The notes: generated by a model from the letters alone, not told the origin. A DNA stretch of 64,000 nucleotides from Macrostomum hystrix (GCA_950097015.1 CATNEN010000001.1:23994001-24058000), one strand, 5' to 3'; positions 2,399 to 22,053 are shown, counted from the stretch's first letter. Made by a program: numbers and translations.

Positions 2399-2694
2399 CC
2401 AAATTGCAGCTCGTTTTCTCCGCCAAGAGAGTCCAAATCCTTTTTTAACTGAAAAACACCGTCGCTGCAGTTCAAGCCGCGCAAGAAGAATGGATGCGGG
2501 TACAGCTCAGCGCTGACTGTTCCGCCTATCACAATCAGGGACTTGTTGGCTAGATCGATATTACTGATGCGCAATCTCACGAAGTGATTTTTGTCGCCTT
2601 GGCTGTACAGGACTCCGCCAGGGTCGTAGCGAAATCTGTGATATGCGACCGGCTGGTCTAAAACCTGAATTGTGGGACTCGATGCACTTGACAT
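2399..2694 (-). CDS. Rel/NF-kB-like gene C, first coding exon (N-terminal Rel homology domain); remainder lies beyond the window start
   Basis: MSSASSPTIQVLDQPVAYHRFRYDPGGVLY...YPHPFFLRGLNCSDGVFQLKKD...ELQFG aligns with exon 1 of genes A and B. A phase-2 donor (TTTGG|GTTTGT at 2398) sits at the same position as in the paralogues. Confidence 0.8.
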
Positions 2695-3946
2695 TTATCT
2701 ATTTGAGCGAACGCCGAGTGCTGCAATGATTGCGAACAGGTCAATGGGTCAGGTAGGTGAGTGGATTAGCTGGGTGATCTGGGTGGTGAGTGGGTCAGGG
2801 AGACGAGTGTGTCAGGGAGGTGAGTGGGTCAGGGAGGTGAGTGGGTCAGGGAGGCGAGTGGGTCAGGGAGGTGAGTGGGTCAGGGAGGTGAGTGGGTCAG
2901 GGAGGTGTGTGGGTCAGCAAAGTGATCAGGGAGGCGAGTGGGTCAGGGAGGTAAGTGGGTCAGGGAGGCGAGTGGGTCAGGGAGGTGAGTGGGTCAGAGA
3001 GGTGAGTGGGTCAGGGAGGTGAGTGGGTCAGGGAGGCGAGTGGGTCCGGGAGGTGAGTGGGTCAGGGATTTGAGTGGGTCAGGGAGGTGTGTGGGTCAGG
3101 GAGGTGAGTGGGTCAGGGAGGTGTGTGGGTCAGGGAGGTGTTTGGGTCAGCTAGGTGATCAGGGAGGCGAGTGGGTCAGGGAGGTGAGTGGGTCAGGGAG
3201 GTGAGTGGGTCAGGGAGGTGTGTGGGTCAGCTAGGTGATCAGGGAGGCGAGTGGGTCAGGAAGGTGAGTGGGTCAGGGAGGTGAGTGGGTCAGGGAGGCG
3301 AGTGGGTCAGGGAGGTGAGTGGGTCAGGGAGGTGAGTGGGTCAGGGAGGTGTGTGGGTCAGCTAGGTGATCAGGGAGGCGAGTGAGTCAGGAAGGTGAGT
3401 GGGTCAGGGAGGTGAGTGGGTCAGGGAGGTGAGTGGGTCAGGGAGGTGAGTGGGTCAGGGAGGTGAGTGGGTTAGCTGGGTGATCAGGTAGGTGAGTGGG
3501 TCAGGGAGGCGGATGTGTCAGCTGGGTGACCAGGGATGTGAGTGGGTCAGGGATTTGAGTGGGTCAGGGAGGTGAGTGGGTCAGGGAGGTGTGTGGGTCA
3601 GCTGGGCGATCAGGGAGGCGTTTAAGAAAATAAAAACCCAAAAGCCACAGCGAGAAGCAGATAATAAGGAAGTACATATCTACATGCTGTAAGAATCGAT
3701 GCACTTGACATTTATCTATTTGAGCGAACGCCGAGTGCTGCAATGATTGCGAACAGGTCAATGGGTCAGGTAGGTGAGTGGATTAGCTGGGTGATCTGGG
3801 TGGTGAGTGGGTCAGGGAGACGAGTGTGTCAGGGAGGTGAGTGGGTCAGGGAGGCGAGAAAGAAAATAAATAAGAAAATAAAAACCCAAAAGCCACAGCG
3901 AGAAGCAGATAATGAGGAAGTACATATCTACATGCTGTAAGAATCG
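2679..3946. repeat. Tandem duplication (2679-3695 and 3696-3946) containing a G-rich gagtgggtcagggaggt minisatellite
   Basis: tcgatgcacttgacattt...ggtcaatggg starts at both 2679 and 3696. aagaaaataaaaaccc...gaatcg occurs at both about 3624 and about 3872. The array is expanded only in the first copy. Confidence 0.9.
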
Positions 3947-4205
3947 TGTTTGTTAGATAGTAGAAATACTAGATACACGTGGGGCAGGACTCACCGCAAG
4001 CATCAAAATTGTAAAAAATAAGCGTTTATCTGGATAGGATGGCAGTCCTAGTTTAAAAATGTAATAGTGATCAAAGTCACTGGCGCTATCTACCAGCTAG
4101 AGGCACAATAAGAATTTTACAATGCCTACTCATGCCAACGGCTAAAAGCACTTTGGCACATAACAGTAATAAAAATCAACTCAATCAGCTGCACTGCAGC
4201 TGGAA

Positions 4206-4263
4206 TTATAACACGCTGGGACCGAACGCAGCCAAAGAGGGTACTAAGTTGGACTCAATCTGC

Positions 4264-4352
<89 letters not shown>

Positions 4353-7300
4353 GTGGTGGTGGTGCTGCTGCTGCTGTTGCCGCTCAACTGGAGCAGTCAA
4401 TCTTTGTCGCCTGGCAGAAGGCGGCTGCGCCAGGTTGTCTAAAACTATAATTAAAAATAACTAATTGGCCACTTAGCTTGCTACTGCTGCGATTCTGGAT
4501 TAGGCTACTGCTGCGATTCTGGATTAGGCTACTGCTGCGATTCTGGATTAGGCTACTGCTGCGATTCTGGATTAGGCCACTGCTGCGATTCTGGATTAGG
4601 CTACTGCTGCGATTCTGGATTAGGCTACTGCTGCGATTCTGGATTAGGCTACTGCTGCGATTCTGGATTAGGCCACTGCTGCGATTCTGGATTAGGCCAC
4701 TGCTGCGATTCTGGATTAGGCTACTGCTGCGATTCTGGATTAGGCTACTGCTGCGATTCTGGATTAGGCCACTGCTGCGATTCTGGATTAGGCTACTGCT
4801 GCGATTCTGGATTAGGCTACTGCTGCGATTCTGGATTAGGCCACTGCTGCGATTCTGGATTAGGCCACTGCTGCGATTCTGGATTAGGCTACTGCTGCGA
4901 TTCTGGATTAGGCCACTGCTGCGATTCTGGATTAGGCCACTGCTGCGATTCTGGATTCTGGATTAGGCTACTGCTGCGATTCTGGGTTATAATTCAAAAG
5001 CAACATACAATTTCTAGGAAACTGCCACAAAGTTGAAAAATCACATTAACTTACAACCATCTAGAAGGCCTTCAAGTGAATTGATTTCATCGAAAATCAG
5101 TGGCTGAGGATTCTTTAGAATGAAGGTTCGCCTATCACAGATATTATTTTTTGTATCACAGACATTCAGATGACATTTGATCTGCTCATTAACATCATTG
5201 GCTAGTTGATGTGACAAATCCTTCTTGGTGGCCACAATCAGGTGCTGCAAAGGTTCCATTTTTCATAGTCTTGATTTTATGAAAAGAGATATTTAAAAAC
5301 AATGTCCCGAATGTTACCCACCTTTCGAACCATTTTAATATCCAGTTCAGCTAGCTTTATTGGCGAGGCATTCGCGGCCTCGTCAGGATCCGACGAGTCC
5401 GCCAAGCTAAGGAACAATGAGAACTGGCTGGGGTCGACGTCTGGAGTGAAATGAAAGCATTTAAAGGTAACATGAGACAGGTTGAAAGCGACAACAAAGG
5501 AGAAAGCAAGCTGCATCGAACTCACGCGGCAGTTGGTTCTCAAAGTACAGCCACAAATCGTGACTCCCAGACACAAACGAAGTATCCGGGTGCGAGCCGT
5601 ACAGGCCGAGTCTGGGCTGCTGCTCTGCGGATGAGAACAGGGTGGAAACCTCGAAGTAGCACCTCGAACCTGTTGCGAATCTGGCTGCGGTTCTAGCTCA
5701 GGATCCTGCTGCAATTCTAGCTCAGGATCCTGCTGCGATTCTAGCTCAGGATCCTGCTGCGATTCTAGCTCAGGATCCTGCTGCGATTCTAGCTCAGGAT
5801 CCTGCTGCGATTCTAGCTCAGGATCCTGCTGCGATTCTAGCTCAGGATCCTGCTGCGATTCTGAATCAGGATCCTGCTGCGATTCTAGCTCAGGATCCTG
5901 CTGCGATTCTGAATCAGGATCCTGCTGCGATTCTGAATCAGGATCCTGCTGCGATTCTAGCTCAGGATCCTGCTGCGATTCTAACTCTGGATCCTGCTGC
6001 GATTCTAGCTCAGGATCCTGCTGCGATTCTAACTAAGGATCCTGCTGCGATTCTAGCTCAGGATCCTGCTGCGATTCTAACTCAGGATCCTTCTGCGATT
6101 CAAAATCAGGATCCTGATGCGATTCTGAATCAGGAACCTGCTGCGATTCTAACTCTGGATCCTGCTGCGATTCTACGTCAGGATCCTGCTGCGATTCTGA
6201 ATCAGGATCCTGCTGCGATTCTGAATCAGGAACCTGCTGCGATTCTAACTCTGGATCCTGCTGCGATTCTACGTCAGGATCCTGCTGCGATTCTGAATCA
6301 GGAACCTGCTGCGATTCCAAATCAGGATCCTGCTGCGATTCTGAATCAGGATCCTGCTGCGATTCTGAATCAGGAACCTGCTGCGATTCTAACTCTGGAT
6401 CCTGCTGCGATTCTACGTCAGGATCCTGCTGCGATTCTGAATCAGGAACCTGCTGCGATTCCAAATCAGGATCCTGCTGCGATTCTGAATCAGGAACCTG
6501 CTGCGATTCCAAATCAGGATCCTGCTGCGATTCTGAATCAGGATCCTGCTGCGATTCTGAATCAGGATCCTGCTGCGATTCTGAATCAGGAACCTGCTGC
6601 GATTCTAACTCTGGATCCTGCTGCGATTCTACGTCAGGATCCTGCTGCGATTCTGAATCAGGATCCTGCTGCGATTCTGAATCAGGAACCTGCTGCGATT
6701 CTAACTCTGGATCCTGCTGCGATTCTACGTCAGGATCCTGCTGCGATTCTGAATCAGGAACCTGCTGCGATTCCAAATCAGGATCCTGCTGCGATTCTGA
6801 ATCAGGATCCTGCTGCGATTCTGAATCAGGATCCTGCTGCGATTCTGAATCAGGATCCTGCTGCGATTCTAGCTCAGGATACTGCAGCGATTCCAAATCA
6901 GGATCCTGCTGCGATTCTGAATCAGGATCCTGCTGCGATTCTAGCTCAGGATCCTGCTGCGATTCTAACTCGGGATCCTGCTGCGATTCTAGCTCAGGAT
7001 CCTGCTGCGATTCTAACTCAGGATCCCGCTGCGATTCTAACTCGGGATCCTGCTGTGATTCTAACTCGGGATCCTGCTGTGATTCTAACTCGGGATCCTG
7101 CTGTGATTCTAAGTCAGGACCCTGCTGCGATTCTTAACCAGGATCCTTCTGCGATTCAAAATCAGGATCCTGCTGCGATTCTTAACCAGGATCCTGCTGC
7201 GATTCTTAACCAGGATCCTTCTGCGATTCAAAATCAGGATCCTGCTGCGATTCTTAACCAGGATCCTGCTGCGATTCTTAACCAGGATCCTGCTGCGATT

Positions 7301-8395
7301 CTTAACCAGGATCCTGCTTGATTTCAAAGCTCATTCCTGAAGCTCAGCAAGCCATACTATTTAAGCAATGCGTCTAACGCACTGTGGTCGTGAATTTCCT
7401 CGGAAGCCACAACAGCGTCAGTTGCCACAGTAACATCGTCGTGACCAGTGACGTAGACACTGAAAGCCAGACGCACTGGCTTCACGTTTCTAGAATTGTA
7501 CCTTTGAGATAGATCAGTCAGATCCTCTGCAAGCAAATTGAATGACGTCTTCAGTTGTATGGCTAAATGCTATCAGCATAGTATCAATAATTCTTCCTTC
7601 ACTCACTGCTAAATGGGTTGTAGTTCATTTCGATTCGCTTCTTAACAGCATCAGCCAGCTTCTCGGGTGGGCGCAGCAGAACGCACACCAAGGATAGCCG
7701 CTCCAGGCTGACGGTAACACAATGGGGGGAGAAAGACAGATAGGTGGGGGGAGAAAGACAGATAGGTGGGGGGAGAAAGACAGATAGGTGGGGGGAGAAA
7801 GACAGATAAGTAGGGGAGAAAGACAGCTGACTGTAGGGAGAAAGGCAGATGGCGGAAGAAAGACAGCTGACTGTGGGGAGAAAGACAGATCGGGGAAGAA
7901 AGACAGCTGACTGTGGGGAGAAAGACAGATCGGGGAAGAAAGCTACGTAGGGAGAAAGACAGTTCAATGGGTAAATAAAGACATCTGAATAGGGGAGAAA
8001 GACGGATGGGGGAGAGCGCTGCGTGGGGGAGCAAGACAGCTGACTGGTAAAAGAAAGACAGCTTATAGGGGAAGAAAAACTTACGAAATGTCGAACTGTG
8101 AGCTGGCGCCCAGTGCAGACACATCCTTCTTCAACTGGAAGGCTCCGTTGCTGCAGTTGTCGCCAACCATAAAGAACGGATGCGGGTACAGGTCCGAGCT
8201 GACGGTGGATCCAATGACCGTCAGGGTCTTGTGCGTCAGTGGATCGATGCCGCTGACCCGAAGCCGGACGCAGCTCTGGTTGCCACCGCGGCCATATAGA
8301 ATGCCGCCGAGTCGGCCGTTCTGAATCTCCTTCTCGTACCGAAACCTGTGGTACTCGGTCGGCTGCTCCATGATTTCTATTCTCAGCTGGGCCAT
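4206..8395 (-). CDS. Rel/NF-kB-like transcription factor gene B (7 exons, about 398 aa): RHD + IPT/TIG + basic NLS-like motif + poly-Q/H tail
   Basis: Exons 8395-8085, 7707-7607, 7526-7383, 5624-5526, 5440-5322, 5244-5055 and 4438-4206. All introns are GT-AG, phases 2,1,1,1,0,1, giving an open 1197-nt frame. Motifs IEIMEQP..HRFRYEKE, YPHPFFMVGDNCSNG, LERLSLVCV..AVKKRIEMNYNPF and VRLAFSVYV..SEEIHD parallel the RelA RHD. Tail is PSARRQRL followed by poly-Q/H. Confidence 0.88.
4476..4985. repeat. 24-bp minisatellite (ctactgctgcgattctggattagg)n in intron 6 of gene B
   Basis: About 21 units sharing the ctgcgattct core with neighbouring arrays. Confidence 0.95.
5690..7320. repeat. 24-bp minisatellite (caggatcctgctgcgattctgaat)n in intron 3 of gene B
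   Basis: About 68 units. The minus strand reads ESQQDPDS but has in-frame stops at 6033 and in the GGTTAA units. Confidence 0.95.
7720..8078. repeat. Purine-rich degenerate repeat (ggggagaaagacagataggt) in intron 1 of gene B
   Basis: Visible reiteration of gggagaaagacag. Confidence 0.85.
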
Positions 8396-8445
8396 CCGGC
8401 TCAGTAATAATGCTGAAGGCGTTGATTGCGGATGTTACCGAATAT

Positions 8446-9025
8446 GAGATGCCAGCCAATGAGATTCCCACCAATGAGATGCCCGCCAATGAGATTCCCA
8501 CCAATGAGATGCCCGCCAATGAGATTCCCACCAATGAGATTCCCACCAAGATTGACATGAGATCTATACCAAGATTAAAATGAGATCTATACCAAGATTA
8601 ACATGAGATCTATACCAAGATTAACATGAGATCTACTCCAAGATTAACATCAGATCTATACCAAGATTGACATGAGATCTATACCAAGATTGACATGAGA
8701 TCTATACCAAGATTGACATGAGATCTATACCAAGATTGACATGAGATCTATACCAAGATTAAAATGAGATCTATACCAAGATTAACATGAGATCTATACC
8801 AAGATTGACATGAGATCTATACCAAGATTAAAATGAGATCTATACCAAGATTAACATGAGATCTATACCAAGATTAACATGAGATCTACTCCAAGATTAA
8901 CATGAGATCTACTCCAAGATTGACATGAGATCTATACAAAGATTGACATGAGATCTACTCCAAGATTGACATGAGATCTACTACAAGATTGACATGAGAT
9001 CTATACAAAGATTGACATGAGATCT
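8446..9025. repeat. 15-bp (gagattcccaccaat) array grading into a 23-bp (ccaagattgacatgagatctata) array, just upstream of gene B
   Basis: Direct tandem periodicity. Confidence 0.93.
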
Positions 9026-9537
9026 ACAGTTATCATTTCAGATTATTCATCTTAAGACCGTCTTTGATTAATACTATGAAATCTACACTGAATAATAGCT
9101 CGTATTGTTTTTATATGTTTTAGACTTTGCGAAAAAAAACAAAGACACAGAATTCGTGCGTTAATTTTATCTTTTTAAGAGTTATTCCGCTTTTTTAACA
9201 TAAAATTTCCATAACTTATGCACAGGTAGCATTACAGTAACTTATTACATTACAAAAAGTAAAAATTACATACACTAGACATAAAAAAGTGCAACGATAC
9301 ACATTTGCCTTTATTAGTCTAATTAAATGGATTTTATAAATTTAATCGTAATTATTGAAATTTAGATGAATTATTATCATCAGAAACAAAAGCGAGCATT
9401 GACAGTAATTTTAGAGCAAACAATTATGTGCAAAAACAGCTAGCTCTTGATTGTTAAGCAGTGGTGCTGACTTAAACACAAACAACAATATGATTATCAT
9501 TAAAGGACCAAATAACCTATTACCTATTGATTTTCAT

Positions 9538-10040
9538 AACCTTTGAAGGGCCACAACACCAGCTTTCTTTGAAGGGCCACAACACCCGCTTTCTTTGAAG
9601 GGCCACAACACCCGTTATCTTTGAAGGGCCACAACACCCACTTTCTTTGAAGGGCCACAACACCCACTTTCTTTGAAGGGCCACAACACCCGTTATCTTT
9701 TAATGGCCACAACACCCGCTTTCTTTGAAGGGCCACAACACCTGTTATCTTTGAAGGGCCACAGCACCCGCTTTCTTTGAAGGGCCACAACACCTGTTAT
9801 CTTTGAAGGGCCACAGCACCCGCTTTCTTTGAAGGGCCACAACACCGTTATCTTTTAAGGGCCACAACACCCGCTATCTTTGAAGGGCCACAACACCCGC
9901 TTTCTTTTAAGGGCCACAACACCCGCTATCTTTGAAGGGCCACAACACCCGTTATCTTTTAAGGGCCACAACACCCGTTATCTTTGAAGTGCCACAACAC
10001 CCGCTTTCTTTGAAGGGCCTCAACACCAGTTTTCTTTCGA
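9538..10040. repeat. 26-bp minisatellite (ctttgaagggccacaacacccgttat)n
   Basis: About 19 units. Confidence 0.93.
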
Positions 10041-10693
10041 TGGTCAAAACCCTCGCTATAGTTAAGGAGCTATATCAAACAATAGACCTTGCCATTTGTT
10101 TACTAATTCTGGACTACACCACTGCTTAGTGCATAGCAATCAAGACGGTCTATTGTACTTTAGCGCAACAAAGACAGGCGTAGAAAATAATGAAATCAAA
10201 TAATACAAACAATTTGACAGGATCGAGCAACCAATAAAAAACGTATAACTTATATTATACTAGTACTGAAGTACTTAGCACTAACTGTACGTAGTACTTA
10301 GCATTTTGTTTTACAGCGTAAACAAGTTTTTTAGGCTTAAAATGCCAAAACTGTATTATTTTTAATAACTATTTTCAAGCGATTTATGGACTTTTGTATT
10401 TTTAAAGTAACAACTCGAACTAGCGCTACGAAATAAAGTATAAATTACTTTTAATATATAAACATCTGACGACAAATAGGATTCTTAATGAAATTGTAAA
10501 AAAATATTTTCAAGCAAAGCACAAAGACTGCAGGAAGAATGAAAAAGTGCTATTGTCTCCTTCCAAAAAATGTTAAATACTTACGTTCAATATCATTGCC
10601 TAAATAAAATTTCACTTACCCACACAAAATCAATTGAACCAAACTTAATATTGAGCTATTTAATAATCCGACATGGATAAGATATTTTTGACA

Positions 10694-10876
10694 GCTGCGG
10701 ATCCTGCTTCGATTCTGAATTCGGATCCTGCTTCGATTCTGACTGCGGATCCTGCTTCGATTCTGACTGCGGATCCTGCTTCGATTTTGACTGCGGATCC
10801 TGCTTCGATTCTGACTGCGGATCCTGCTTCGATTCTGACTGCGGATCCTGCTTCGATTCTGACTGCGGATCCTGCT
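10694..10876. repeat. 24-bp minisatellite (gcggatcctgcttcgattctgact)n downstream of the gene A stop
   Basis: About 7.5 units; same family as the 5690-7320 array. Confidence 0.9.
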
Positions 10877-11074
10877 ACATTTTTATTTAGCTATATAGCT
10901 TAACATGATACGAAATTAAAATAATAGGTAAATATATTTTTACACCTAACTCCCAAGAACTTGGATGCACGAATTGCCTAAGGTAACTAATGCTAGCTGA
11001 AAATTGCGTTCTCAAAGAGTTATTTAAAATCATTGTACCAGAGTCTCGACAATATCGACGCAATTGTTTACAAA

Positions 11075-14000
11075 TTAAAGAGATGAAATTTTTACATCAG
11101 GCAAGCTGATCGCTTTTGAGTCGCTTTGAGCTTTGAGCACTTTTGAGTCGCTCACAGGTTCTTCATCATCAGCTGACGCTGCTTCCTTTGTTGCTAGCAG
11201 CAAGTCGAAGCTGGCAGTGGTGGCCCCAGCGCCTTTGGAATTTCGGCTGCGTTTGGCCGGCGGAGAGGCTGGATGGCGTTGTGCGACTGGATTGATTTCT
11301 AAGAAACGGATTTGAGCATCATTATATAGACATAATAAATGTTGTTTTACAGAATTTTAAAGTTTCAGGAATTCGAAGATTCTTTAGTTGGGATTCTTAG
11401 AATAGGAATTTAAAGTTGAGATTCTTAGAATAGGATCATTTAGTTGGGATTCTTAGAATAGGAATTTAAAGTTGAGATTCTTAGAATAGGATTCTTTAGT
11501 TGGGATTCTTAGAATAGGATTCTTTAGTTGGGATTCTTAGAATAGGATTATTTAGTTGGTATTCTTAGAATAGGATTCTTTAGTTGGTATTCTTAGAATA
11601 GGATTCTTTAGTTGGAATTCTTAGAATATGATTCTTTAGTTGGTATTCTTAGAATAGGATTCTTTAGTTGGGATTCTTAGAATAGGATTATTTAGTTGGG
11701 ATTCTTAGAATAGGATTATTTAGCTGGGATTCTTAGAATAGGATTCTTTAGTTGGGATTCTTAGAATAGGAATTTAAAGTTGAGATTCTTAGAATAGGAT
11801 TATTTAGTTGGGATTCTTAGAATAGGAATTTAAAGTTGAGATTCTTAGAATAGGAATTTAAAGTTGAGATTCTTAGAATAGGATTATTTAGTTGGGATTC
11901 TTAGAATAGGAATTTAAAGTTGAGATTCTTAGAATAGGATTCTTTAGTTGGTATTCTTAGAATAGGATTATTTAGTTGGGATTTTTAGAATAGGAATTTA
12001 AAGTTGAGATTCTTAGAATAGGATTCTTTAGTTGGGATTCTTAGAATAGGATTATTTAGCTGGGATTCTTAGAATAGGAATTTAAAGTTGAGATTCTTAG
12101 AATAGGATTATTTAGTTGGGATTCTTAGAATAGGATTCTTTAGTTGGGATTCTTAGAATAGGATTATTTAGTTGAGATTCTTGGAATAGGATTATTTAGT
12201 TGGAATTCTTAGAATAGGATTCTTTAGTTGGTATTCTTAGAATAGGATTCTTTAGTTGGAATTCTTAGAATATGATTCTTTAGCCCGGTTGCCAAAAAAA
12301 GTTGAATGGGCCACATTTTTTGGCCCACTAGTGGGCCAAAGTTTGGTTCTGAGCGGCCCACAGAAAGCCCACATTGACCCACGCTGACCCAGAAAGTGTT
12401 TAATGGCAGACACCGGGTCACACGGCGGCTCATACGGAGGCCCGTACAGGCCCGTACACGGCGGCCCACACAGGCCCATAAACGGCGGCCCTTACAGGCC
12501 CATACACGGCGGCCCATACAGGCCCGTACACGGCGGCCCATACAGGCCCATACACGGCGGCCCATTTTGGCTTGTATACACTGGCCCTTGATGGCCCATA
12601 TTGGCCCACAAATACTGCCACATATACCGGCCCACATTGGCCCACACATACTGGCCCATATTGGCCCACATATACTGCCACATATACTGGCCCATATTGG
12701 CCCACATATACTGGCCCATATTGGCCCACATATGCTGCCACATATACTGGCCCAAATTGGCCCACATATACTGGCCCATATTGGCCCACATATACTGGCC
12801 CATATTGGCCCACATACGCTGGTTCATATTGGCCCACATATACTGGCCCATATTGGCCCACATATGCTGGCCCATATTGGCTCACATATACTGGCCCATA
12901 TTGGCCCACATATACTGGCCCATATTGGCCCACATATACTGACCCATATACTGGCCCATATTGGCCCACATATACTGGCCCATATACTGGCCCATATTGG
13001 CCCACATATGCTGCCACATATACTGGCCCATATTGGCCCACATATACTGGCCCATATTGGCCCACATATGCTGCCACATATACTGGCCCATATTGGCCCA
13101 CATATGCTGCCACATATACTGGCCCATATTGGCCCACATATACTGGCCCATATTGGCCCACATATGCTGCCACATATACTGGCCCATATTGGCTCACATA
13201 TGCTGGCCCATATTGGCTCACATATGCTGGCCCATATTGGCTCACATATACTGGCCCATATTGGCTCACATATGCTGGCCCATATTGGCTCACATATGCT
13301 GGCCCATATTGGCTCACATATACTGGCCCATATTGGCTCACATATGCTGGCCCATATTGGCCCACATATACTGACCCATATACTGGCCCATATTGGCCCA
13401 CATATACTGGCCCATATTGGCTCACATATACTGGCCCATATACTGGCCCATATACTGGCCCATATTGGCCCACATATACTGGCCCATATTGGCCCACATA
13501 TGCTGGCCCATATTGGCTCACATATACTGGCCCATATTGGCCCACATATACTGGCCCATATTGGCCCACATATGCTGCCACATATACTGGCCCATATTGG
13601 CCCACATATACTGGCCCATATTGGCTCACATATGCTGGCCCATATTGGCTCACATATGCTGGCCCATATTGGCTCACATATACTGGCCCATATTGGCTCA
13701 CATATGCTGGCCCATATTGGCTCACATATGCTGGCCCATATTGGCTCACATATACTGGCCCATATTGGCTCACATATGCTGGCCCATATTGGCCCACATA
13801 TACTGACCCATATACTGGCCCATATTGGCCCACATATACTGGCCCATATTGGCTCACATATACTGGCCCATATACTGGCCCATATACTGGCCCATATTGG
13901 CCCACATATACTGGCCCATATTGGCCCACATATGCTGGCCCATATTGGCTCACATATACTGGCCCATATTGGCCCACATATACTGGCCCATATTGGCCCA

Positions 14001-17000
14001 CATATGCTGCCACATATACTGGCCCATATTGGCCCACATATACTGGCCCATATTGGCTCACATATGCTGGCCCATATTGGCTCACATATGCTGGCCCATA
14101 TTGGCTCACATATACTGGCCCATATTGGCTCACATATGCTGGCCCATATTGGCTCACATATGCTGGCCCATATTGGCTCACATATACTGGCCCATATTGG
14201 CTCACATATGCTGGCCCATATTGGCCCACATATACTGACCCATATACTGGCCCATATTGGCCCACATATACTGGCCCATATTGGCTCACATATACTGGCC
14301 CATATACTGGCCCATATACTGGCCCATATTGGCCCACATATACTGGCCCATATTGGCCCACATATGCTGGCCCATATTGGCTCACATATACTGGCCCATA
14401 TTGGCCCACATATACTGGCCCATATTGGCCCACATATGCTGCCACATATACTGGCCCATATTGGCCCACATACGCTGGTTCATATTGGCCCACATATACT
14501 GGCCCATATTGGCCCACATATGCTGGCCCATATTGGCCCACATATACTGGCCCATATTGGCTCACATATGCTGGCCCATATTGGCCCACATATGCTGGCC
14601 CATATTGGCCCACATACGCTGGTTCATATTGGCCCACATATACTGGCCCATATTGGCCCACATATGCTGGCCCATATTGGCCCACATATACTGGCCCATA
14701 TTGGCTCACATATGCTGGCCCATATTGGCTCACATATGCTGGCCCATATTGGCTCACATATGCTGGCCCATATTGGCCCACATATACTGGCCCATATTGG
14801 CCCACATATGCTGGCCCATATTGGCCCACATATACTGGCCCATATTGGCTCACATATGCTGGCCCATATTGGCCCACATATACTGACCCATATTGGCCCA
14901 TATTGGCCCACATATCCCAGCCTATATTGGCCTACATATACTGGCCCATATTGGCCCACATACGCTGGCCCATATTGGCTGGTCCATATATTATAGCGCA
15001 TGGGGCCAAAGTAATTACTAATTACTATAAAAAACAAGTACCTATTTCTCTTTAATACGGCTTGCCTCTTAAATATTTACTTGCCATGTAACTAATTGTG
15101 AATGGATTGTGAATGAGCAATGCTTGTATTGCGCAAAACTTGCACAGCAACATGTGTAGGATACAAGTAGGAAACAAATTAATAGAAAGATTGTAACGCA
15201 TGGATTGATTGGTTGACTGAAAGGTTCAGTCATGTAGGACACATTTGGTTTTCATAACCACATACTCTCCGCTGCATCTATAGTCTAGGTTTTCTTCTTC
15301 GCTTCAGCAGCTGACAGATCCCGCAATGGCCGCTTACGACGAGGCAACGACTTCATAGCTTCGATAGGCGCTTCAGGGGGTGTAGGGGGCATCTCGATTG
15401 CCCAAAACTGGGCAATAAACACGGCAAAATGAATGGACAGGTTATATTTCATTGTGATATTAAACAAAGTTACATCATTTGCGCTGTGCAACTTGGACTT
15501 TAAAGTCATAAAAAACGTATTCGAATGCTAGTGAAAAAACAATCCATTTATCTAGCCATTGACAAGCATACGCATTGGCTATTTAAATCCTTTTGCATGA
15601 GCCAATATGGGCCAGTATATGTGGGCCAATATGGGCCAGCATATGTGAGCCAATATGGGCCAGTATATGTGGGCCAATATGGGCCAGCGTATGTGGGCCA
15701 ATATAGGCCAGTATATGTGGGCCAATATGGGCCAGTATATGTGAGCCAATATGGGCCAGTATATGTGGGCCAATATGGGCCAGTATATGTGGGCCAATAT
15801 GGGCCAGTATATGTGGGCCAATATGGGCCAGCATGTGAGCCAATATGGGCCAGTATATGTGAGCCAATATGGGCCAGTATATGTGGGCCAATATGGGCCA
15901 GCGTATGTGGGCCAATATGAGCCAGTATATGTGGGCCAATATGGGCCAGTATATGTGGCACTATATGTGGGCCAATATGGGCCAGTATATGTGGCAGTAT
16001 ATGTGGGCCAATATGGGCCAGTATATGTGGGCCAATATGGGCCAGTATATGTGGCAGTATATGTGGGCCAATATGGGCCAGTATATGGGCCAGTATATGT
16101 GGGCCAATATGGGCCAGTATATGTGAGCCAATCTGGGTCAGCATATGTGGGCCAATATGGGCCAGCGCATGTGGGCCAATATGGGCCAGCATTCTTGGGT
16201 CACAATAGTGGGCCGAAAGTGGGCTGAATTGGACATTCGGCTCGTTATATGGGCCAATTATTAATGGGCTCTTAATGGGCCTATGTGGGCCACTTGTTGG
16301 CCCATCTATATGTGGGCCGAAACTGGGCAAAAAGCCCGCAAATTGGGCTAAAAGGCACTGGCCCACTGTTGGCCCACTGAAAAGCCCATACTTGCATGAA
16401 AAAAGCCCTTTGGTTTGGCAACCGGGTAGTTGGTATTCTTAGAATAGGATTCTTTAGTTGGGATTCTTAGAATAGGATTCTTTAGTTGGGATTCTTAGAA
16501 TAGGATTATTTAGCTGGGATTCTTAGAATAGGAATTTAAAGTTGAGATTCTTAGAATAGGATTATTTAGTTGGGATTCTTAGAATAGGAATTTAAAGTTG
16601 AGATTCTTAGAATAGGAATTTAAAGTTGAGATTCTTAGAATAGGATTATTTAGTTGGGATTCTTAGAATAGGAATTTAAAGTTGAGATTCTTAGAATAGG
16701 AATTTAAAGTTTAGATTCTTAGAATAGGATTATTTAGTTGGGATTCTTAGAATAGGAATTTAAAGTTGAGATTCTTAGAATAGGATTATTTAGTTGGGAT
16801 TCTTAGAATAGGATTATTTAGTTGGGATTTTTAGAATAGGATTATTTAGTTGGGATTTTTAGAATAGGATTATTTAGTTGGGATTTTTAGAATAGGAATT
16901 TAAAGTTGAGATTCTTAGAATAGGATTATTTAGTTGGGATTCTTAGAATAGGAATTTAAAGTTGAGATTCTTAGAATAGGAATTTAAATTTGAGATTCTT

Positions 17001-20000
17001 AGAATAGGAATTTAAAGTTGAGATTCTTAGAATAGGATTATTTAGTTGGGATTCTTAGAATAGGAATTTAAAGTTGAGATTCTTAGAATAGGATTATTTA
17101 GTTGAGATTCTTAGAATAGGATTATTTAGTTGAGATTCTTAGAATAGGATTATTTAGTTGGGATTTTTAGAATAGGAATTTAAAGTTGAGATTCTTAGAA
17201 TAGGATTATTTAGCTGGGATTCTTAGAATAGGATTATTTAGCTGGGATTCTTAGAATAGGAATTTAAAGTTGAGATTCTTAGAATAGGATTATTTAGTTG
17301 GGATTCTTAGAATAGGATTATTTAGTTGGGATTCTTAGAATAGGATTATTTAGTTGGGATTCTTAGAATAGGATTATTTAGCTGGGATTCTTAGAATAGG
17401 ATTATTTAGTTGAGATTCTTAGAATAGGATTATTTAGTTGGGATTTTTAGAATAGGAATTTAAAGTTGAGATTCTTAGAATAGGAATTTAAAGTTGAGAT
17501 TCTTAGAATAGGAATTTAAAGTTGAGATTCTTAGAATAGGAATTTAAAGTTGAGATTCTTAGAATAGGATTATTTAGTTGGGATTCTTAGAATAGGAATT
17601 TAAAGTTGAGATTCTTAGAATAGGATTATTTAGTTGAGATTCTTAGAATAGGATTATTTAGTTGAGATTCTTAGAATAGGATTATTTAGTTGGGATTTTT
17701 AGAATAGGAATTTAAAGTTGAGATTCTTAGAATAGGATTATTTAGTTGGGATTCTTAGAATAGGATTATTTAGCTGAAATTCTTAGAATAGGATTATTTA
17801 GCTGGGATTCTTAGAATAGGATTATTTAGTTGGGATTCTTAGAATAGGATTATTTAGTTGAGATTCTTAGAATAGGATTATTTAGTTGGGATTTTTAGAA
17901 TAGGAATTTAAAGTTGAGATTCTTAGAATAGGATTATTTAGTTGGGATTCTTAGAATAGGATTATTTAGTTGGGATTCTTAGAATAGGATTATTTAGTTG
18001 GGATTCTTAGAATAGGATTATTTAGCTGGGATTCTTAGAATAGGAATTTAAAGTTGAGATTCTTAGAATAGGATTATTTAGTTGGGATTCTTAGAATAGG
18101 AATTTAAAGTTGAGATTCTTAGAATAGGAATTTAAAGTTGAGATTCTTAGAATAGGATTATTTAGTTGGAATTCTTAGAATATGATTCTTTAGTTGGTAT
18201 TCTTAGAATAGGATTCTTTAGTTGGGATTCTTAGAATAAGAATTTAATTTGAGATTCTTAGAATAGGATTCTTTTGTTGGGATTCTTAGAATGGGATTTT
18301 TTGGCGTGGATCATCGGAATGGGATTTCTTGGCGTGGATTATTAGAATGGGATTTTTACTTGTGATTATTTATATGTTGCAATTAATTCTCCTGTTGGCA
18401 TTTTAAATATGGAATTCGATTTTTGGGATTATCAGGATGCCAGACTCAGTGCTCTGTACAATATGAACTCAAACTCACCATCAGGCAGTCGGCGCACACC
18501 TGATGTGTTTCTGTCGCTGCCGCGGCCGCAGACGCCGCAGACTACGGACAGGACGAAGTCGCACTCGGCCGTGACTCGGCTCTTCAAGTCCACAACCCGG
18601 AGACAGCACTTCAGCCGCTCGATCTGCTGCTGTCTTCGATGAAATTCAGGCGGCAAGTTTGAGTTGTCGATGCGTGGTACGCTCACCGACATCAGTTGCT
18701 GCGCGAGGCGGGTTAGGATAGACAGTTTTTGATTGACTGGTTAACAGCAGAACTACCAAGGGGGATTTCCCCCTGATAATTTTAGCGCTGCACCCGAACG
18801 GAGCAGCGCAAGCACACGAAACTCAAGAACACTGCCCAAATTTTTGTTGCGCATCTTCTGATAAAATAATCAAGTCGCCAGCTCTTCAGACCGTCGAGAT
18901 ATTCAATGGTTCTGGCCGAAGGGCAGATTTTCCCCATAAGCGCTAGTGTATTTCATACACCCAAATACACAAATTACTAGGGGTGTCCCAAAAGTTCCCG
19001 GAATGTCCGAGGTAGCTCTTCAACGGAGCCATGAAATTTCATGCCCATTGTGTCAAATGAAAGGAAATTTTGTCACAAAGAAAACAAAGTTAAAATCATG
19101 TTCATATCCGTTGAAGAGCTACCTTGGACATTCCGGGAACTTTTGGGACACCCCTCGTAGCACTGCGCCTCAGTGCGGCCTTGCCAGGCCTTCAAACTTT
19201 ATCAGCACGTCAGCCGAATGTTCCTGCATCATCTCCGTCTTCGGTGGTCACCTACCTTCAGTGGCTACAACAGATGGAACTAGGCCATTATGGACACCCT
19301 GACGCGAATTTCTCTAATTTCACTGATCGCATTCGAGCGTTGCCAAATGCCATAATAAAAATAACGCGGGCCCATCATTTGGTGACACTCCTGAGCACAC
19401 ACTCACACAGGTGTGTACATCTGCCCTGACTTTTTCATCGTCAGGCAGTGTACACTCTCACTGTGCCTTGGAGGTTGGCCCTCAAGGGCGTGAATTGCAC
19501 GACAAGCCCCCAAAGCCTTCTCTCCGCGGCTGCGCCCCCAAATGTGGCCTCGCCGGGGAATCGAACTCAGGGATCTTGGAACTTGGACCCCAATAACACC
19601 AATGATTTGGTTGCTTGACAAATTTTGATAAATTTAGGTTTAACTGACGAAAAAGCTACGTACTGATTGAGGATACACTTAAAATACATTCTAGCTTCAG
19701 AAGATAACCTTAACGCGTTAAAAAATGTAACATTTGAGCAACCTTTTTCATCCAGAGAACGTGGCAACGAGCTATTTCGGCACCCTCGAAGTCCAGCACT
19801 GCGCCATATTGCGACTGGTCGAAATCTGAAATCATTATCGATTATTGACAATTCAAAACAACATCGTTACAAATGATTCATTTTGAAGTCGCGCACTTAC
19901 GAGGCAATGTGTCTTTAAACAGCAGCCAGACCTCCTGTTCATTGGCTTCAATCAGGCCTTCATTGGGATGAATTTCTTCTATCTCGAGTTTCGTTTGGAA

Positions 20001-22053
20001 TTCTGAAATTTCAGGAAGACATCTAGAATGATTTGTTTAAGGCCCTTAAGCAATGAAACAGTTTTATGAATACTCACTTATATCCGATATTATATCGGTC
20101 TGTGCTATGGCGCCCTTGCAAGTCACCGTTTTACCGTTCATGTCCACATAGTAGGCTTGGAATACAAGGCGCAGTTCACGAGCATTCCTGGGCGTGTACT
20201 TCACTTCTGAGGATTTCTCTGCGGATTGGAGACACAATGGTCAAATCGAGTCGGTAGTTTAATTTCAGGACTGCTCAAATACAGTCAGTCAGGAGCACTT
20301 CAGAAGTGCTCAAATTGAGTCAGTCAACTTCAGGAGTGCTCAAATTGAGTCAGTCAACTTCAGGAGTGCTCAAATCGAGTCAGTTAACTTCAGGTATGCT
20401 CAACTTCAGGAGTGCTCAAATCGAGTCAGTTAACTTCAGGTATGCTCAACTTCAGGAGTGCTCAAATCGAGTCAGTTAACTTCAGGTATGCTCAACTTCA
20501 GGAGTGCTCAAATTGAGACAGTTAACTTCAGGTATGCTCAACTTCAGGAGTGCTCAAATCGAGTCAGTTAACTTCAGGTATGCTAAACTTCAGGAGTGCT
20601 CAAATCGAGTCAGTTAACTTCAGGTATGCTCAACTTCAGGAGTGCTCAAATCGAGTCAGTTAACTTCAGGTATGCTCAACTTTAGGAGTGCTCAAATTGA
20701 GACAGTCAACTTTAGGAGTGCTCAAATTCAGACAGTCAACTTTAGGAGTGCTCAAATTGAGACAGTCAACTTCAGGAGTGCTCAAATTGAGACAGTCAAC
20801 TTTAGGAGTGCTCAAATTGAGACAGTCAACTTTAGGAGTGCTCAAATTGAGCCAGTCAACTTCAGGAGTGCTCAAATTGAGACAGTCAACTTTAGGAGTG
20901 CTCAAATTGAGACAGTCAACTTTAGGAGTGCTCAAATTGAGTTGCCATATATTAGCCAATTACACTTAACATCTATCAACTAAGTGTGAGAAGTATAATA
21001 AAGTGTTAAACTCACTGTTAAACGGATTAAACTGTATTGCTTCACGTCGTTTCACAGCCTCTTTGAGTCGGTCGCCAACTTGAGGCACACAGACGAGGGA
21101 CACTTTCTCCAGGCTGGAAATGTAAGGACGAGATTAATGAAAAATGAAGTGAGGGTAAACATGAGAGAGACAGTGAGCCTAGAGACAGTGAGGTCAGAGT
21201 CAGTGAGGTCAGGGACAGTGAGGTCAGAGACAGTGAGGTCAGGGACAGTGAGGTCAGAGACAGTGAGGTCAGGGACAGTGAGGTCAGAGACAGTGAGTTC
21301 AGAGACAGTGAGGTCAGAGACAGTGAGGTCAGGGACAGTGAGGTCAGGGACAGTGAGGTCAGGGACAGTGAGGTCAGGGACAGTGAGGTCAGGGACAGTG
21401 AGGTCAGGGACAGTGAGGTCAGGGACAGTGAGGTCAGAGACAGTGAGGTCAGAGACAGTGAGGTCAGGGACAGTGAGGTCAGAGACAGTGAGTTCAGAGA
21501 CAGTGAGTTCAGAGACAGTGAGGTCAGGGACAGTGAGGTCAGGGACAGTGAGTTCAGAGACAGTGAGTTCAGAGACAGTGAGGTCAGGGACAGTGAGGTC
21601 AGGGACAGTGAGGTCAGGGACAGTGAGGTCAGGGACAGTGAGGTCAGGGACAGTGAGGTCAGGGACAGTGAGGTCAGAGACAGTAAGAGTAGAGATGGGG
21701 AAGACGGTAAGGTTGAAGATTGGCCCAGCAAGTTCGTGAGCTCACGCAATCTCAAACTCGGCCCTGCCCTTATCAGCAGGTGTGAGATCTTTGCGCCACT
21801 GGAAGGCGCCACTTTCGCAGGATTCGCCGTGCATGTAGAAGGGGTGGGGATAGCCGTCCGGGCTGACCGTGCCGCCGATGACAATGACGCTGCGGTGCAC
21901 GGAGACATCGGCGCCGCTGAGGACCAGGCGTACGCAGCTTTTGCTGCCTGATCGGCCGTACAGAAGCCCTCCAAGCTTGCCGCCAGCAATCTCGGTCTCG
22001 TAGCGAAACCGGTGATACTGAGCTGGCTGCTCAACTATTCGAAGGGTCAGCAT
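11075..22053 (-). CDS. Rel/NF-kB-like transcription factor gene A (7 exons, about 391 aa): RHD + IPT/TIG + NLS-like PPAKRSR
   Basis: Exons 22053-21746, 21113-21016, 20218-20078, 20002-19901, 19825-19743, 18698-18479 and 11298-11075. All introns are GT-AG with phases 2,1,1,1,0,1, identical to gene B, giving an open 1176-nt frame. Motifs: LRIVEQPAQYHRFRYETE, YPHPFYMHGESCESG, LEKVSLVCV..AVKRREAIQFNPF, LRLVFQAY, TDIISD, and IPT-like LEIEEIHPNEG..EVWLLF. Confidence 0.88.
11378..18355. repeat. 28-bp (2 x 14-bp) minisatellite (gggattcttagaataggattatttagtt)n in intron 6 of gene A, split by a DNA transposon
   Basis: Arrays at about 11378-12283 and 16427-18355 rejoin in register once the insert is removed. 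Confidence 0.95.
12284..16426. mobile_element. Non-autonomous foldback-like DNA transposon (probably CMC/CACTA-EnSpm-like), 4143 bp
   Basis: 13-bp perfect TIRs CCCGGTTGCCAAA...TTTGGCAACCGGG. 3-bp TSD TAG at 12281-83 and 16427-29. Inverted subterminal arrays of ggcccatattggcccacatatact at about 12590-14990 (+) and 15597-16190 (-). No transposase ORF. Confidence 0.88.
18977..19157. mobile_element. Tc1/mariner-type MITE, 181 bp, in intron 5 of gene A
   Basis: About 50-bp TIRs C(T/G)AGGGGTGTCCCAAAAGTTCCCGGAATGTCC..GGTAGCTCTTCAACGGA, with TA on both sides (18975-76 and 19158-59). Confidence 0.9.
19374..19590 (-). mobile_element. Partial copy of tRNA-derived SINE family 1
   Basis: Matches 27846-28189 and 39822-40170 (gtgtacatctgccctgac..., aagccttctctccgcggctgcgcc). 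Confidence 0.8.
20262..20942. repeat. 30-bp and 47-bp minisatellite (gtcaactttaggagtgctcaaattgagaca) in intron 2 of gene A
   Basis: Direct tandem periodicity. Confidence 0.93.
21165..21684. repeat. 15-bp minisatellite (gacagtgaggtcagR)n in intron 1 of gene A
   Basis: About 34 units; source of the SLSLT and TVRSG ORFs. Confidence 0.95.

What the first reader, a model, noticed from the sequence alone, without database searches (positions are those of the whole stretch)
2399..22053. Hidden tandem cluster of three divergent Rel/NF-kB-like genes threaded through minisatellites
Seen: short minus-strand exons, which the ORF track shows only as fragments, splice into two complete 7-exon genes (A 22053-11075, B 8395-4206) with identical intron phases (2,1,1,1,0,1), plus exon 1 of a third (C, 2694-2399). 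Known: the motif order EQP..RFRY, PHP..G..C..G, L..CV..R...NPF, VRL.F, I.D, then an IPT domain and a basic NLS is the Rel homology region. No ankyrin repeats follow, so these are Rel-type rather than p105/Relish-type. Inference: this is an old, lineage-specific tandem expansion of highly diverged paralogues. If the host is a flatworm, this matters because NF-kB is generally regarded as absent from well-studied planarians and parasitic flatworms, so the cluster could be an unrecognised Rel-based immune or stress system.
Basis: partly seen in the sequence, partly recalled or inferred. Interest (0 to 1): 0.92.

Follow-up and report, generated by a model that had tools for sequence, protein, structure and literature searches.

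The report
Tandem divergent Rel-like genes, flatworm
Three neighbouring genes in a Macrostomum-type flatworm genome, part of a six-gene array, encode very divergent Rel/NF-kB-type DNA-binding proteins; the genes are real, but the family is already listed, unstudied, in a sister species and was reported in planarians in 2026.

Summary
Gene A (22053-11075, minus strand) has seven exons with intron phases 2,1,1,1,0,1. Spliced 1.4-kb transcript contigs with no mismatches, found in four public runs, confirm introns 2-5, the acceptor of intron 1 and the donor of intron 6.

Gene B (8395-4206) has the same seven-exon plan, with GT..AG at all introns, but I have no RNA for it. Gene C starts at 2694-2399 and is completed left of the window. 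Three more copies (D, E, F) lie further left, so the array has six genes.

Exon 1 of each gene matches Pfam RHD_DNA_bind. Every A exon, and B exons 1-4 and 6, match a profile of Macrostomum lignano relatives in order. The modelled M. lignano orthologue of A is a two-domain Rel-homology fold: Z about 19 to RelA, c-Rel and RelB, 17-18 to p50/p52, and 13-14 to NFAT. A basic nuclear-import motif follows, and there are no ankyrin repeats.

"Unrecognised" is overstated. UniProt already names the M. lignano orthologues "RHD domain-containing protein". A 2026 paper reports seven divergent RHD factors in Schmidtea. This scan had already found similar clusters elsewhere in this genome. The function, immune or otherwise, is untested.

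The parts
21746..22053 (-). Gene A exon 1 (ATG at 22053; first half of the RHD N-terminal domain with recognition loop YHRFRYETE and PHPFYMHGESCESG)
   Evidence: Pfam RHD_DNA_bind 28.9 bits, E 1.3e-6, profile positions 1-81. It is 81% identical to M. lignano P0007. The donor GT is at 21745-21744. The exon is single-copy in the genome.
21016..21113 (-). Gene A exon 2 (LEKVSLVCV...AIQFNPFN)
   Evidence: The transcript contigs cover 21016-21113 and join 21016 to 20218. The acceptor AG is at 21115-21114. The exon matches family profile positions 109-140, E 1e-10.
20078..20218 (-). Gene A exon 3 (end of the N-terminal domain, LRLVFQAYY...)
   Evidence: Contig pieces with 0 mismatches lie here in 4 runs, with joints on both sides. 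The exon matches profile positions 143-186, E 1.3e-12.
19901..20002 (-). Gene A exon 4 (linker and start of the IPT/dimerisation domain)
   Evidence: Contig pieces lie here with both joints. The exon matches profile positions 190-220.
19743..19825 (-). Gene A exon 5 (IPT domain, middle)
   Evidence: Joints 19825>19901 and 18698>19743 are present in all four runs. It is 65% identical to P0007 residues 222-247.
18479..18698 (-). Gene A exon 6 (IPT domain, end)
   Evidence: Contig pieces with 0 mismatches lie here. The exon is single-copy in the genome. It matches profile positions 260-303.
11075..11298 (-). Gene A exon 7 (basic motif PPAKRSRNSK, acidic tail, stop TAA at 11077-11075)
   Evidence: The acceptor AG is at 11300-11299 and the frame continues in phase 1. 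The contigs carry 333-372 further nt beyond 18479 (360-372 in three of the four), which fits this exon plus about 110-150 nt of 3' UTR.
8085..8395 (-). Gene B exon 1 (ATG at 8395; YHRFRYEKE, PHPFFMVGDNCSNG)
   Evidence: Pfam RHD_DNA_bind 26.8 bits, E 6e-6. The donor GTAAGT follows at 8084.
7607..7707 (-). Gene B exon 2
   Evidence: GT/AG sites, phase 2 in and phase 1 out. The exon matches profile positions 109-139, E 7e-10.
7383..7526 (-). Gene B exon 3 (VRLAFSVYV...)
   Evidence: Weak Pfam hit to RHD_DNA_bind positions 130-168. The exon matches family profile positions 147-186, E 1e-10.
5526..5624 (-). Gene B exon 4
   Evidence: Matches profile positions 189-220, E 2.5e-6. GT/AG sites.
5322..5440 (-). 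Gene B exon 5 (the weakest exon)
   Evidence: Rests on open frame, GT/AG sites, the correct phases and 15/38 identities to P0003 residues 220-252. There is no significant profile hit.
5055..5244 (-). Gene B exon 6
   Evidence: Matches profile positions 251-299, E 5e-9. The donor GTAAGT follows.
4206..4444 (-). Gene B exon 7 (weak basic motif PPSARRQRL, long Gln/His run, stop at 4208-4206). The acceptor could also be 6 nt downstream, at 4438.
   Evidence: Open frame in phase 1 from either AG. There is no homology beyond the basic motif, and no RNA.
2399..2694 (-). Gene C exon 1 (recognition loop 8 residues shorter: YHRFRYDPGG)
   Evidence: Pfam RHD_DNA_bind 17.7 bits, E 0.004. The donor GT follows at 2398-2397, phase 2. 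Exons 2-7 lie at window -1530 to -2547, outside the window.

Best explanation
The stretch holds the right-hand half of a six-gene, same-strand tandem array on contig C1 of a Macrostomum-type flatworm. The array belongs to a fast-evolving RHD family seen here only in Macrostomum.

Each gene has seven short exons separated by introns packed with minisatellites. Each encodes four parts:
- an N-terminal Rel-homology DNA-binding domain with the loop R-F-R-Y-x-x-E;
- an IPT-type dimerisation domain;
- a short basic nuclear-import motif directly after it;
- a short, variable tail: acidic in A, Gln/His-rich in B, none in C.

There are no ankyrin repeats.

Shown here:
- the gene structure, and for A its transcription and splicing;
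- Rel homology by sequence and, on the M. lignano orthologue of A, by predicted fold;
- conservation of the array's genes, and of the order A-B-C, in M. lignano;
- purifying selection on exon 1.

Inferred: the proteins act like Rel/Dorsal-class factors. That means dimers that bind kappaB-like sites, with activity set by access to the nucleus, possibly held back by separate ankyrin proteins. Paralogues probably differ in DNA specificity or partner choice. A role in immunity or stress is plausible but untested.
For: **RHD domain**
- Pfam RHD_DNA_bind hits exon 1 of A, B and C.
- Full-length M. lignano relatives score 42-66 bits.
- The exons match the family profile in order.

**Transcription of A**
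- Spliced contigs with no mismatches occur in 4 runs, with GT..AG joints.
- A's exons 1 and 6 are single-copy in the genome.

**Class**
- The family profile against the PDB gives RelB 7e-23, c-Rel 2e-21, p65 4e-20, p50 2e-12 and p52 about 1e-10 to 1e-9. No NFAT appears at E<=0.01.
- The AF2 model of orthologue P0007 has mean pLDDT 80.9.
- Foldseek gives RelA E 3.5e-17.
- VIA-align gives Z 19 for the Rel class, 17-18 for p50/p52 and 13-14 for NFAT. The C-terminal domain alone gives Z 11, rmsd 2.3-2.6 over 96-98 residues, against RelB, p50 and p65 dimerisation domains.

**Dimer**
- A homodimer model of the P0007 IPT domain scored 0.37 against a best control of 0.02. The mark was reached by 21 of 30 solved pairs and 0 of 23 single chains. 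Runs agreed in at least 92% of contacts, with partner pLDDT 82.

**Age and constraint**
- The tree gives a Macrostomum family clade at 100/99. Orthologue pairs are A-P0007 100/98, E-P0010 100/98, F-P0020 100/100 and C-P0009 90/91.
- dN/dS is 0.17-0.38 with dS above 1.1.

**No ankyrin**
- A's stop comes 74 codons after the IPT exon, and its transcript is only about 1.4 kb.
Against: - Pfam RHD_dimer does not hit any family member.
- B and C have no expression evidence.
- B's basic motif (ARRQR) is weak.
- C lacks 8 loop residues, including the Glu at the place of p65 Glu39.
- The family lacks the redox Cys of the RFRYxCEG loop.
- The unrooted tree puts the family outside all canonical Rel and NF-kB proteins rather than inside the Rel class.
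- The dimer pass may reflect the model's memory of solved Rel dimers.
- No DNA binding, localisation or phenotype data exist.
Confidence: 0.8

Rival explanations
1. The genes are NFAT/TonEBP-type rather than Rel/NF-kB-type RHD factors. The E-T-E after RFRY in the recognition loop is the NFAT pattern.
For: Loop sequence RFRYETE in A and D, compared with NFAT RAHYETEG. The model also aligns with NFAT1 and TonEBP over both domains, at Z 13-14.
Against: The Rel class scores 5 Z units higher. The family profile finds no NFAT chain at E<=0.01 but finds RelB at 7e-23. The genome has separate, well conserved NFAT5-like genes on C24, C38 and C26. The RFRY motif, with Arg at the second position, is the NF-kB form.
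Confidence: 0.05
2. Some copies are not DNA-binding activators. They may be decaying duplicates or natural inhibitors that dimerise with their neighbours. Gene C is the main candidate, with its shortened recognition loop and an end directly after the basic motif. Gene B is a weaker one, with its weak import motif and polyGln tail.
For: C lacks 8 residues of loop L1, including the conserved Glu, and ends SKRTR-stop. B and C have no RNA evidence. An earlier scan note proposes a decoy paralogue in another array of this genome (s1-408133, not tested here).
Against: All exons of B and C are open with canonical splice sites and conserved phases. Exon-1 dN/dS is 0.17-0.38 for pairs with B or C. C has an M. 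lignano orthologue, P0009, at 90/91 support, whose loop is complete.
Confidence: 0.15
3. The family does not act in immunity or stress. It may serve development or cell-type specification, as Dorsal does in insect axis formation, or some other lineage-specific programme.
For: No functional data link it to immunity. In Schmidtea, knock-down of the most Relish-like RHD gene caused rapid lethality and did not change the innate response to transgenes (PMC13563047).
Against: Tandem expansion with fast divergence is typical of defence-related gene families (general knowledge, not a test). TIR-domain genes exist in the genome. IkB/p105-like ankyrin-degron-death genes are reported there too (scan notes s1-270691 and s1-286179, untested). 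An ankyrin-caspase gene abuts the array.
Confidence: 0.4

Closest known systems
Vertebrate RelA (p65), c-Rel and RelB, and insect Dorsal/Dif (Gambif1)
   Same: Two-domain Rel homology region: Z 19 overall, N-domain rmsd 2.2-2.4 over 162-164 residues, C-domain Z 11. The loop carries R-F-R-Y-x-x-E. A basic import motif follows the IPT domain directly. There are no ankyrin repeats. A symmetric dimer through the IPT domain is predicted.
   Different: Only 18-25% identity. Pfam RHD_dimer does not detect the second domain. Cys38 of the loop is replaced by Thr, Lys or Ser. The tails are very short (about 75 residues or none). The family falls outside all canonical Rel and NF-kB proteins in the tree.
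Macrostomum lignano 'RHD domain-containing proteins' (PAA91492-PAA91497, PAA90847-PAA90851; UniProt A0A267H1Q9 and others)
   Same: Direct orthologues or close relatives: A = P0007, E = P0010, F = P0020, C near P0009, and B/D near P0003/P0002. The gene order is the same.
   Different: Identity with A falls from 81% in exon 1 to 42% in exon 6. The tails are unrelated apart from the basic motif. B/D are not one-to-one with the M. lignano copies. None has been studied (one search found no paper naming them).
Seven divergent RHD transcription factors of Schmidtea mediterranea (Development 2026, PMC13563047)
   Same: Flatworm RHD genes on long branches, with low similarity to NF-kB, alongside a well conserved NFAT5 homologue. 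The same pattern is seen here.
   Different: Kinship between the planarian genes and this Macrostomum family was not tested, because no planarian sequences were at hand. The paper reports no tandem arrays.
NF-kB class I (p105/p100, Relish)
   Same: RHD fold, Z 17-18.
   Different: No ankyrin repeats, no death domain and no glycine-rich processing region. A's stop comes 74 codons after the IPT domain. Platyhelminthes are reported to lack p50/p105 (PMC11432056).
NFAT5/TonEBP
   Same: Glu-Thr-Glu follows the Tyr of the recognition loop in A and D. The fold is shared at Z 14.
   Different: The genome has separate, conserved NFAT5-like genes. The family profile does not reach NFAT chains.

Membership tests
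Rel homology domain superfamily | N-terminal RHD DNA-binding domain (Pfam PF00554 at or above its 27-bit cut-off) | tested here: met
   A exon 1 alone scores 28.9 bits, B exon 1 26.8 and C exon 1 17.7, each covering only half of the profile. Full-length M. lignano orthologues score 42.7-66.4 bits over profile positions 1-168.
Rel homology domain superfamily | Recognition loop R-x-x-R-Y-x-x-E that reads the kappaB half-site | tested here: met
   A has HRFRYETE and B has HRFRYEKE. The profile alignment puts this on RelB RFRYECEG. Not met in C (RFRYDPGG, 8 residues shorter). F has RFRF. The Cys of xCEG is absent in all copies.
Rel homology domain superfamily | Second, IPT-type dimerisation domain directly after the first | tested here: met
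   Pfam RHD_dimer gives no hit. The profile aligns with RelB through the first half of its dimerisation domain. Model residues 188-296 of orthologue P0007 match RelB, p50 and p65 dimerisation domains at Z 11, rmsd 2.3-2.6. The fold test was on the orthologue. A's own exons 4-6 map to it colinearly at 42-70% identity.
Rel homology domain superfamily | Dimer formation through the IPT domain | tested here: inconclusive
   The in-silico homodimer of P0007 residues 186-300 scored 0.37 against a best control of 0.02 and passed the mark (reached by 21 of 30 solved pairs, 0 of 23 single chains). Contacts agreed at 92% or more, with pLDDT 82. The pass may come from memory of solved Rel dimers.
Rel class (RelA/c-Rel/RelB/Dorsal) | No C-terminal ankyrin-repeat inhibitor; a basic nuclear-import motif at the end of the RHD | tested here: met
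   A has PPAKRSRNSK and then a stop 74 codons after exon 6, with a transcript of about 1.4 kb. B has ARRQR and then a Gln/His tail and a stop. C has SKRTR-stop. No Ank hit appears in the family members scanned.
Rel class (RelA/c-Rel/RelB/Dorsal) | Phylogenetic placement inside the Rel/Dorsal clade | tested here: not met
   The careful ML tree separates the 15 Macrostomum rows from all 32 canonical rows, Rel-type and ankyrin-bearing alike, at 100/99. The tree is unrooted, has no NFAT outgroup, and warns of long branches.
Rel class (RelA/c-Rel/RelB/Dorsal) | C-terminal transactivation domain | not testable with these tools
   The acidic tail in A (ADDEEPVSDS) and the Gln/His run in B are suggestive only. 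C has no tail.
NF-kB class I (p105/p100/Relish) | C-terminal ankyrin repeats, with or without a death domain | tested here: not met
   A, B and C all reach a stop codon in exon 7: 74 codons after exon 6 in A, about 80 in B and 8 in C. No Pfam Ank hit appears in the M. lignano orthologues.
NFAT/TonEBP | Closest sequence and fold relatives are NFAT; loop R-A-H-Y-E-T-E-G | tested here: not met
   No NFAT chain appears at E<=0.01. NFAT gives Z 13-14 against 19 for Rel. The loop has Arg, not His, at the second basic position.
NF-kB signalling module | Regulation by IkB-type ankyrin proteins and IKK | not tested
   The only leads are a weak IKK scaffold-domain hit on C11, scan notes on ankyrin-degron-death genes, and an ankyrin-caspase gene beside the array.

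The most novel reading that the evidence does not exclude
The divergent RHD arrays may be the working NF-kB of macrostomid flatworms. In this reading, Rel-like dimers are held in check by free-standing ankyrin-degron-death proteins, and perhaps by the ankyrin-caspase gene that abuts this array. That would be a rebuilt Rel/IkB signalling module in a phylum usually described as lacking clear NF-kB, with paralogues diversified for different triggers or as built-in inhibitors.
Probability: 0.25. Interest if true: 0.7.

Novelty: new member of a known kind. Interest (0 to 1): 0.45.

Why it matters
Flatworms are widely treated as lacking clear NF-kB, and the transcription factors downstream of their innate immune kinases are unknown (PMC13563047). 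A conserved, expressed and expanded family of Rel-like factors in Macrostomum gives concrete candidates for that role. RNAi is already in use in Macrostomum (PMC12732829, abstract only), so they could be tested there.

The locus also shows how such genes escape ORF-based annotation. The exons are 83-311 nt long, and 58% of the finding's interval (2399-22053) is minisatellite.

The gain is incremental. The family is already in public databases for M. lignano, planarian counterparts were reported in 2026, and this scan had already met other arrays of the same family in this genome.

Tried and rejected
- **Joined models.** Exons were searched one by one by reference, and full-length M. lignano proteins served as proxies.
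- **Read laying.** As the tool advised, I asked for the part beside it.
M. lignano synteny therefore rests on consecutive accession numbers and on read-through gene models.
- **The search for homologous proteins** with the family alignment found only 13 proteins, nearly all from M. lignano. None was transcript-derived from this species.
- **Pfam on exons 2-7 taken singly** gave nothing, apart from a weak RHD hit for B exon 3.
- **Canonical NF-kB elsewhere in the genome.** I first suspected this from three RHD_dimer hits, then rejected it. Two of them (C24, C38) are NFAT5-like by PDB search, and the third (C26) has an NFAT-type recognition loop.
- **Bivalve kinship.** The bivalve proteins P0041 and P0057 share motifs with the flatworm family but do not group with it.
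- **Literature.** Searches for the M. lignano locus tags found nothing.
- **Phylogeny.** No NFAT-rooted tree was built, because no full-length NFAT sequences were at hand.


Full report
**What is there**

The window is G000:C1:23994001-24058000 of a 220-Mb, 42-contig eukaryotic assembly. The finding's interval is 58% tandem repeat: fourteen minisatellite arrays scoring 200 or more. Between the arrays, on the minus strand, lie short open segments.

Three of these segments begin with ATG and carry the motifs EQP..YHRFRY and PHPF..G..C..G. Their starts are at 22053, 8395 and 2694. Each matches the first half of Pfam RHD_DNA_bind: A scores 28.9 bits (E 1.3e-6), B 26.8 bits and C 17.7 bits.

**Gene A is real, spliced and transcribed**

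Four public runs from one 2020 study held about 27% of the sampled words of 18300-22100.

In every run, one contig of 1395-1434 nt lies with no mismatches on these five blocks:
- 18479-18698
- 19743-19825
- 19901-20002
- 20078-20218
- 21016-21113

The blocks are joined by skips whose ends read CT..AC on the plus strand, which is GT..AG on the minus strand. Unique intron sequence has no depth, so these runs hold processed RNA.

Exons 1 and 6 occur only once in the assembly, which rules out a retrocopy as the source.

Reading the flanks directly gives three more sites:
- the exon 1 donor at 21745-21744;
- the exon 2 acceptor at 21115-21114;
- an exon 7 acceptor at 11300-11299, in the right phase.

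The result is seven exons, 1176 nt (391 codons plus stop) and intron phases 2,1,1,1,0,1. All six introns are GT..AG.

The parts of the contigs beyond the laid stretch are about 514 nt upstream and 333-372 nt downstream. They fit exon 2, exon 1 and about 110 nt of 5' UTR on one side, and exon 7 plus about 110-150 nt of 3' UTR on the other.

**Genes B and C**

B was delimited by homology and splice signals. Its exons are 8395-8085, 7707-7607, 7526-7383, 5624-5526, 5440-5322, 5244-5055 and 4444 (or 4438)-4206, which gives 1203 nt.
- It has the same phases as A.
- All introns are GT..AG.
- The split codons at introns 2-4 are the same as in A (K, K, H).
- Exon 5 is the weakest.
- No RNA evidence exists for B.

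C's exon 1 ends at 2399 in phase 2. Its exons 2-7 lie at window -1530 to -2547. C ends SKRTR-stop, directly after its basic motif.

I did not build or submit joined proteins of A, B or C. Exons were handled one at a time, by reference.

**The array is larger than the window shows**

Three more same-strand copies lie to the left:
- D, at about -4113 to -8863
- E, at about -11093 to -12795
- F, at about -15766 to -18134

There are none to the right of A. The same genome has further RHD clusters on contig C7, which earlier notes of this scan describe.

**What the proteins are**

A profile of exon-1 peptides, run against 1.8 billion representative proteins, found only 72 hits at E<=0.001. The top hits examined were Macrostomum proteins, and the weaker hits examined were canonical Rel, Dorsal and NF-kB proteins.

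The M. lignano relatives are public. NCBI calls them hypothetical proteins, and UniProt calls them 'RHD domain-containing protein'. Their consecutive accession numbers (PAA91492-97) indicate the same array there. Read-through gene models P0004 and P0006 show the same order A-B-C.

Every A exon maps in order onto orthologue P0007 or onto the family profile. Identity of exons 1-6 with P0007 is 81, 71, 78, 70, 65 and 42%. The tail of exon 7 shares only its basic motif with the family.

Full-length relatives score 42-66 bits on RHD_DNA_bind, but nothing on RHD_dimer.

A profile of eight relatives, run against the PDB, gives these E-values:

| Target | E-value |
|---|---|
| RelB | 7e-23 |
| c-Rel | 2e-21 |
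| p65 | 4e-20 |
| Gambif1 | 4e-16 |
| p50 | 2e-12 |
| p52 | about 1e-10 to 1e-9 |
| NFAT | none at E<=0.01 |

The RelB alignment runs into the dimerisation domain.

An AlphaFold2 model of P0007 has mean pLDDT 80.9. It is disordered only after residue 300. The fold comparisons give:

| Comparison | Result |
|---|---|
| Foldseek, RelA | E 3.5e-17 |
| VIA-align, Rel class | Z about 19 |
| VIA-align, p50/p52 | Z 17-18 |
| VIA-align, NFAT | Z 13-14 |
| N-domain alone vs Gambif1 and p65 | rmsd 2.2-2.4 over 162-164 residues |
| C-domain alone vs RelB, p50 and p65 dimerisation domains | Z 11, rmsd 2.3-2.6 |

A homodimer model of the C-domain scored 0.37 against a best control of 0.02. The mark was reached by 21 of 30 solved pairs and 0 of 23 single chains. 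Contacts agreed at 92% or more, with partner pLDDT 82. This supports a Rel-like dimer but does not show it, and the pass may reflect memory of solved Rel dimers.

**Class**

The architecture is Rel-type: RHD, then IPT domain, then basic motif, then a short tail, with no ankyrin repeats. The tails differ between copies: acidic in A, Gln/His-rich in B, absent in C.

The recognition loop is a hybrid. RFRY is the NF-kB form, followed by E-T/K/S-E as in NFAT. The redox cysteine is missing.

In a careful ML tree the 15 Macrostomum rows form one clade (100/99), set apart from all 32 canonical rows. The canonical rows include the ankyrin-bearing proteins and two motif-sharing bivalve proteins. The tree is unrooted and has long branches. 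It shows a distinct family but does not place it inside the Rel class.

The only Pfam-typical RHD_dimer genes in this genome are on C24, C38 and C26. C24 and C38 are NFAT5-like by PDB search, and C26 has an NFAT-type recognition loop. This matches what was reported for Schmidtea: seven long-branch RHD factors and a conserved NFAT5 (PMC13563047). A survey found no p50/p105 in Platyhelminthes (PMC11432056).

**Age and constraint**

A, E and F pair one-to-one with M. lignano proteins at 100/98 support or better, and C with P0009 at 90/91. So the duplications predate the split of the two species.

Between paralogues, exon-1 dS is saturated at 1.1-2.4. dN/dS is 0.17-0.38, including pairs with B and C. 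This argues for maintained coding function.

**Mechanism**

Shown:
- gene structure;
- transcription and splicing of A;
- Rel homology by sequence and by predicted fold;
- conservation in M. lignano.

Inferred:
- dimeric binding to kappaB-like DNA;
- control by nuclear import;
- paralogue-specific specificity, with C a candidate for altered specificity or an inhibitor, given its shortened loop and missing tail;
- a possible link to IkB-like ankyrin proteins reported elsewhere in the genome (untested) and to the ankyrin-caspase gene that abuts gene F.

An immune role is plausible but untested. In Schmidtea, the one RHD gene tested was lethal on knock-down and did not affect the innate response assayed.

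**Verdict**

The Rel reading is supported. The claim of novelty is weakened by public M. lignano entries, by the 2026 planarian report and by earlier finds of this scan on other DNA of this genome.

Noticed in passing
L015:6629-9710 (+), = window -23371 to -20290, just left of gene F: A plus-strand gene with two blocks of ankyrin repeats (Ank_2, 65 and 82 bits) followed by a caspase domain (Peptidase_C14, 56 and 58 bits). It converges on the 3' end of the RHD array. Ankyrin repeats are what IkB uses to bind Rel proteins, and a caspase cleaves Relish in flies. The adjacency may mean something, or nothing.
   Followed up: partly
G000:C24:2419740-2420027, C38:8416266-8417353, C26:345950-346783: These are the only Pfam RHD_dimer hits in the genome. 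C24 and C38 are NFAT5/TonEBP-like (PDB 1imh at E about 1e-16), and C26 has an NFAT-type recognition loop. No canonical NF-kB or Rel gene was detected.
   Followed up: partly
window 2600-2660 and window -2522 to -2547 (L014:7453-7478): Gene C's recognition loop is 8 residues shorter than in A, B, D and E (RFRYDPGG). It lacks the Glu at the place of p65 Glu39. The protein ends SKRTR-stop right after the basic motif. Its M. lignano orthologue, P0009, has the full loop.
   Followed up: partly
window 18783-19646 (intron 5 of gene A): Hundreds of contigs 90-99% alike cover this stretch at depths up to about 11,000 in the RNA runs, with many loose ends. It looks like a transcribed dispersed repeat or mobile element sitting in the intron.
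   Followed up: no
window 11378-12283 and 16427-18302 (intron 6 of gene A): Two separate arrays of the same 28-bp unit, in different register, flank the large 24/48/432-bp array at 12592-14979 and the 24-bp array at 15601-16189. Intron 6 is 7.2 kb long and almost entirely minisatellite.
   Followed up: no
window about 4265-4375 (gene B exon 7): A long CAG/CAC run encodes about 45 Gln with 5 His in B's tail. Such runs are length-unstable, so the tail may vary between individuals.
   Followed up: no
proteins P0041 (Potamilus streckersoni) and P0057 (Mya arenaria): These uncharacterised bivalve proteins of 900-970 residues share HRFRY.SE and PHPF.L.GE.C with the flatworm family. In the tree they sit at the base of the canonical Rel/NF-kB side. 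They may be another divergent spiralian RHD lineage.
   Followed up: partly
G000:C38:8428677-8428889 and G000:C1:24171486-24171710: TIR-domain hits, out of seven in the genome. One lies about 11 kb from the NFAT5-like gene on C38. Another lies about 113 kb right of this window.
   Followed up: no
proteins P0004, P0006 (M. lignano UniProt models): These gene models fuse the end of one array gene to the start of the next (A-like to B-like, and B-like to C-like). They are mis-annotations, but they are useful as evidence of conserved gene order.
   Followed up: partly
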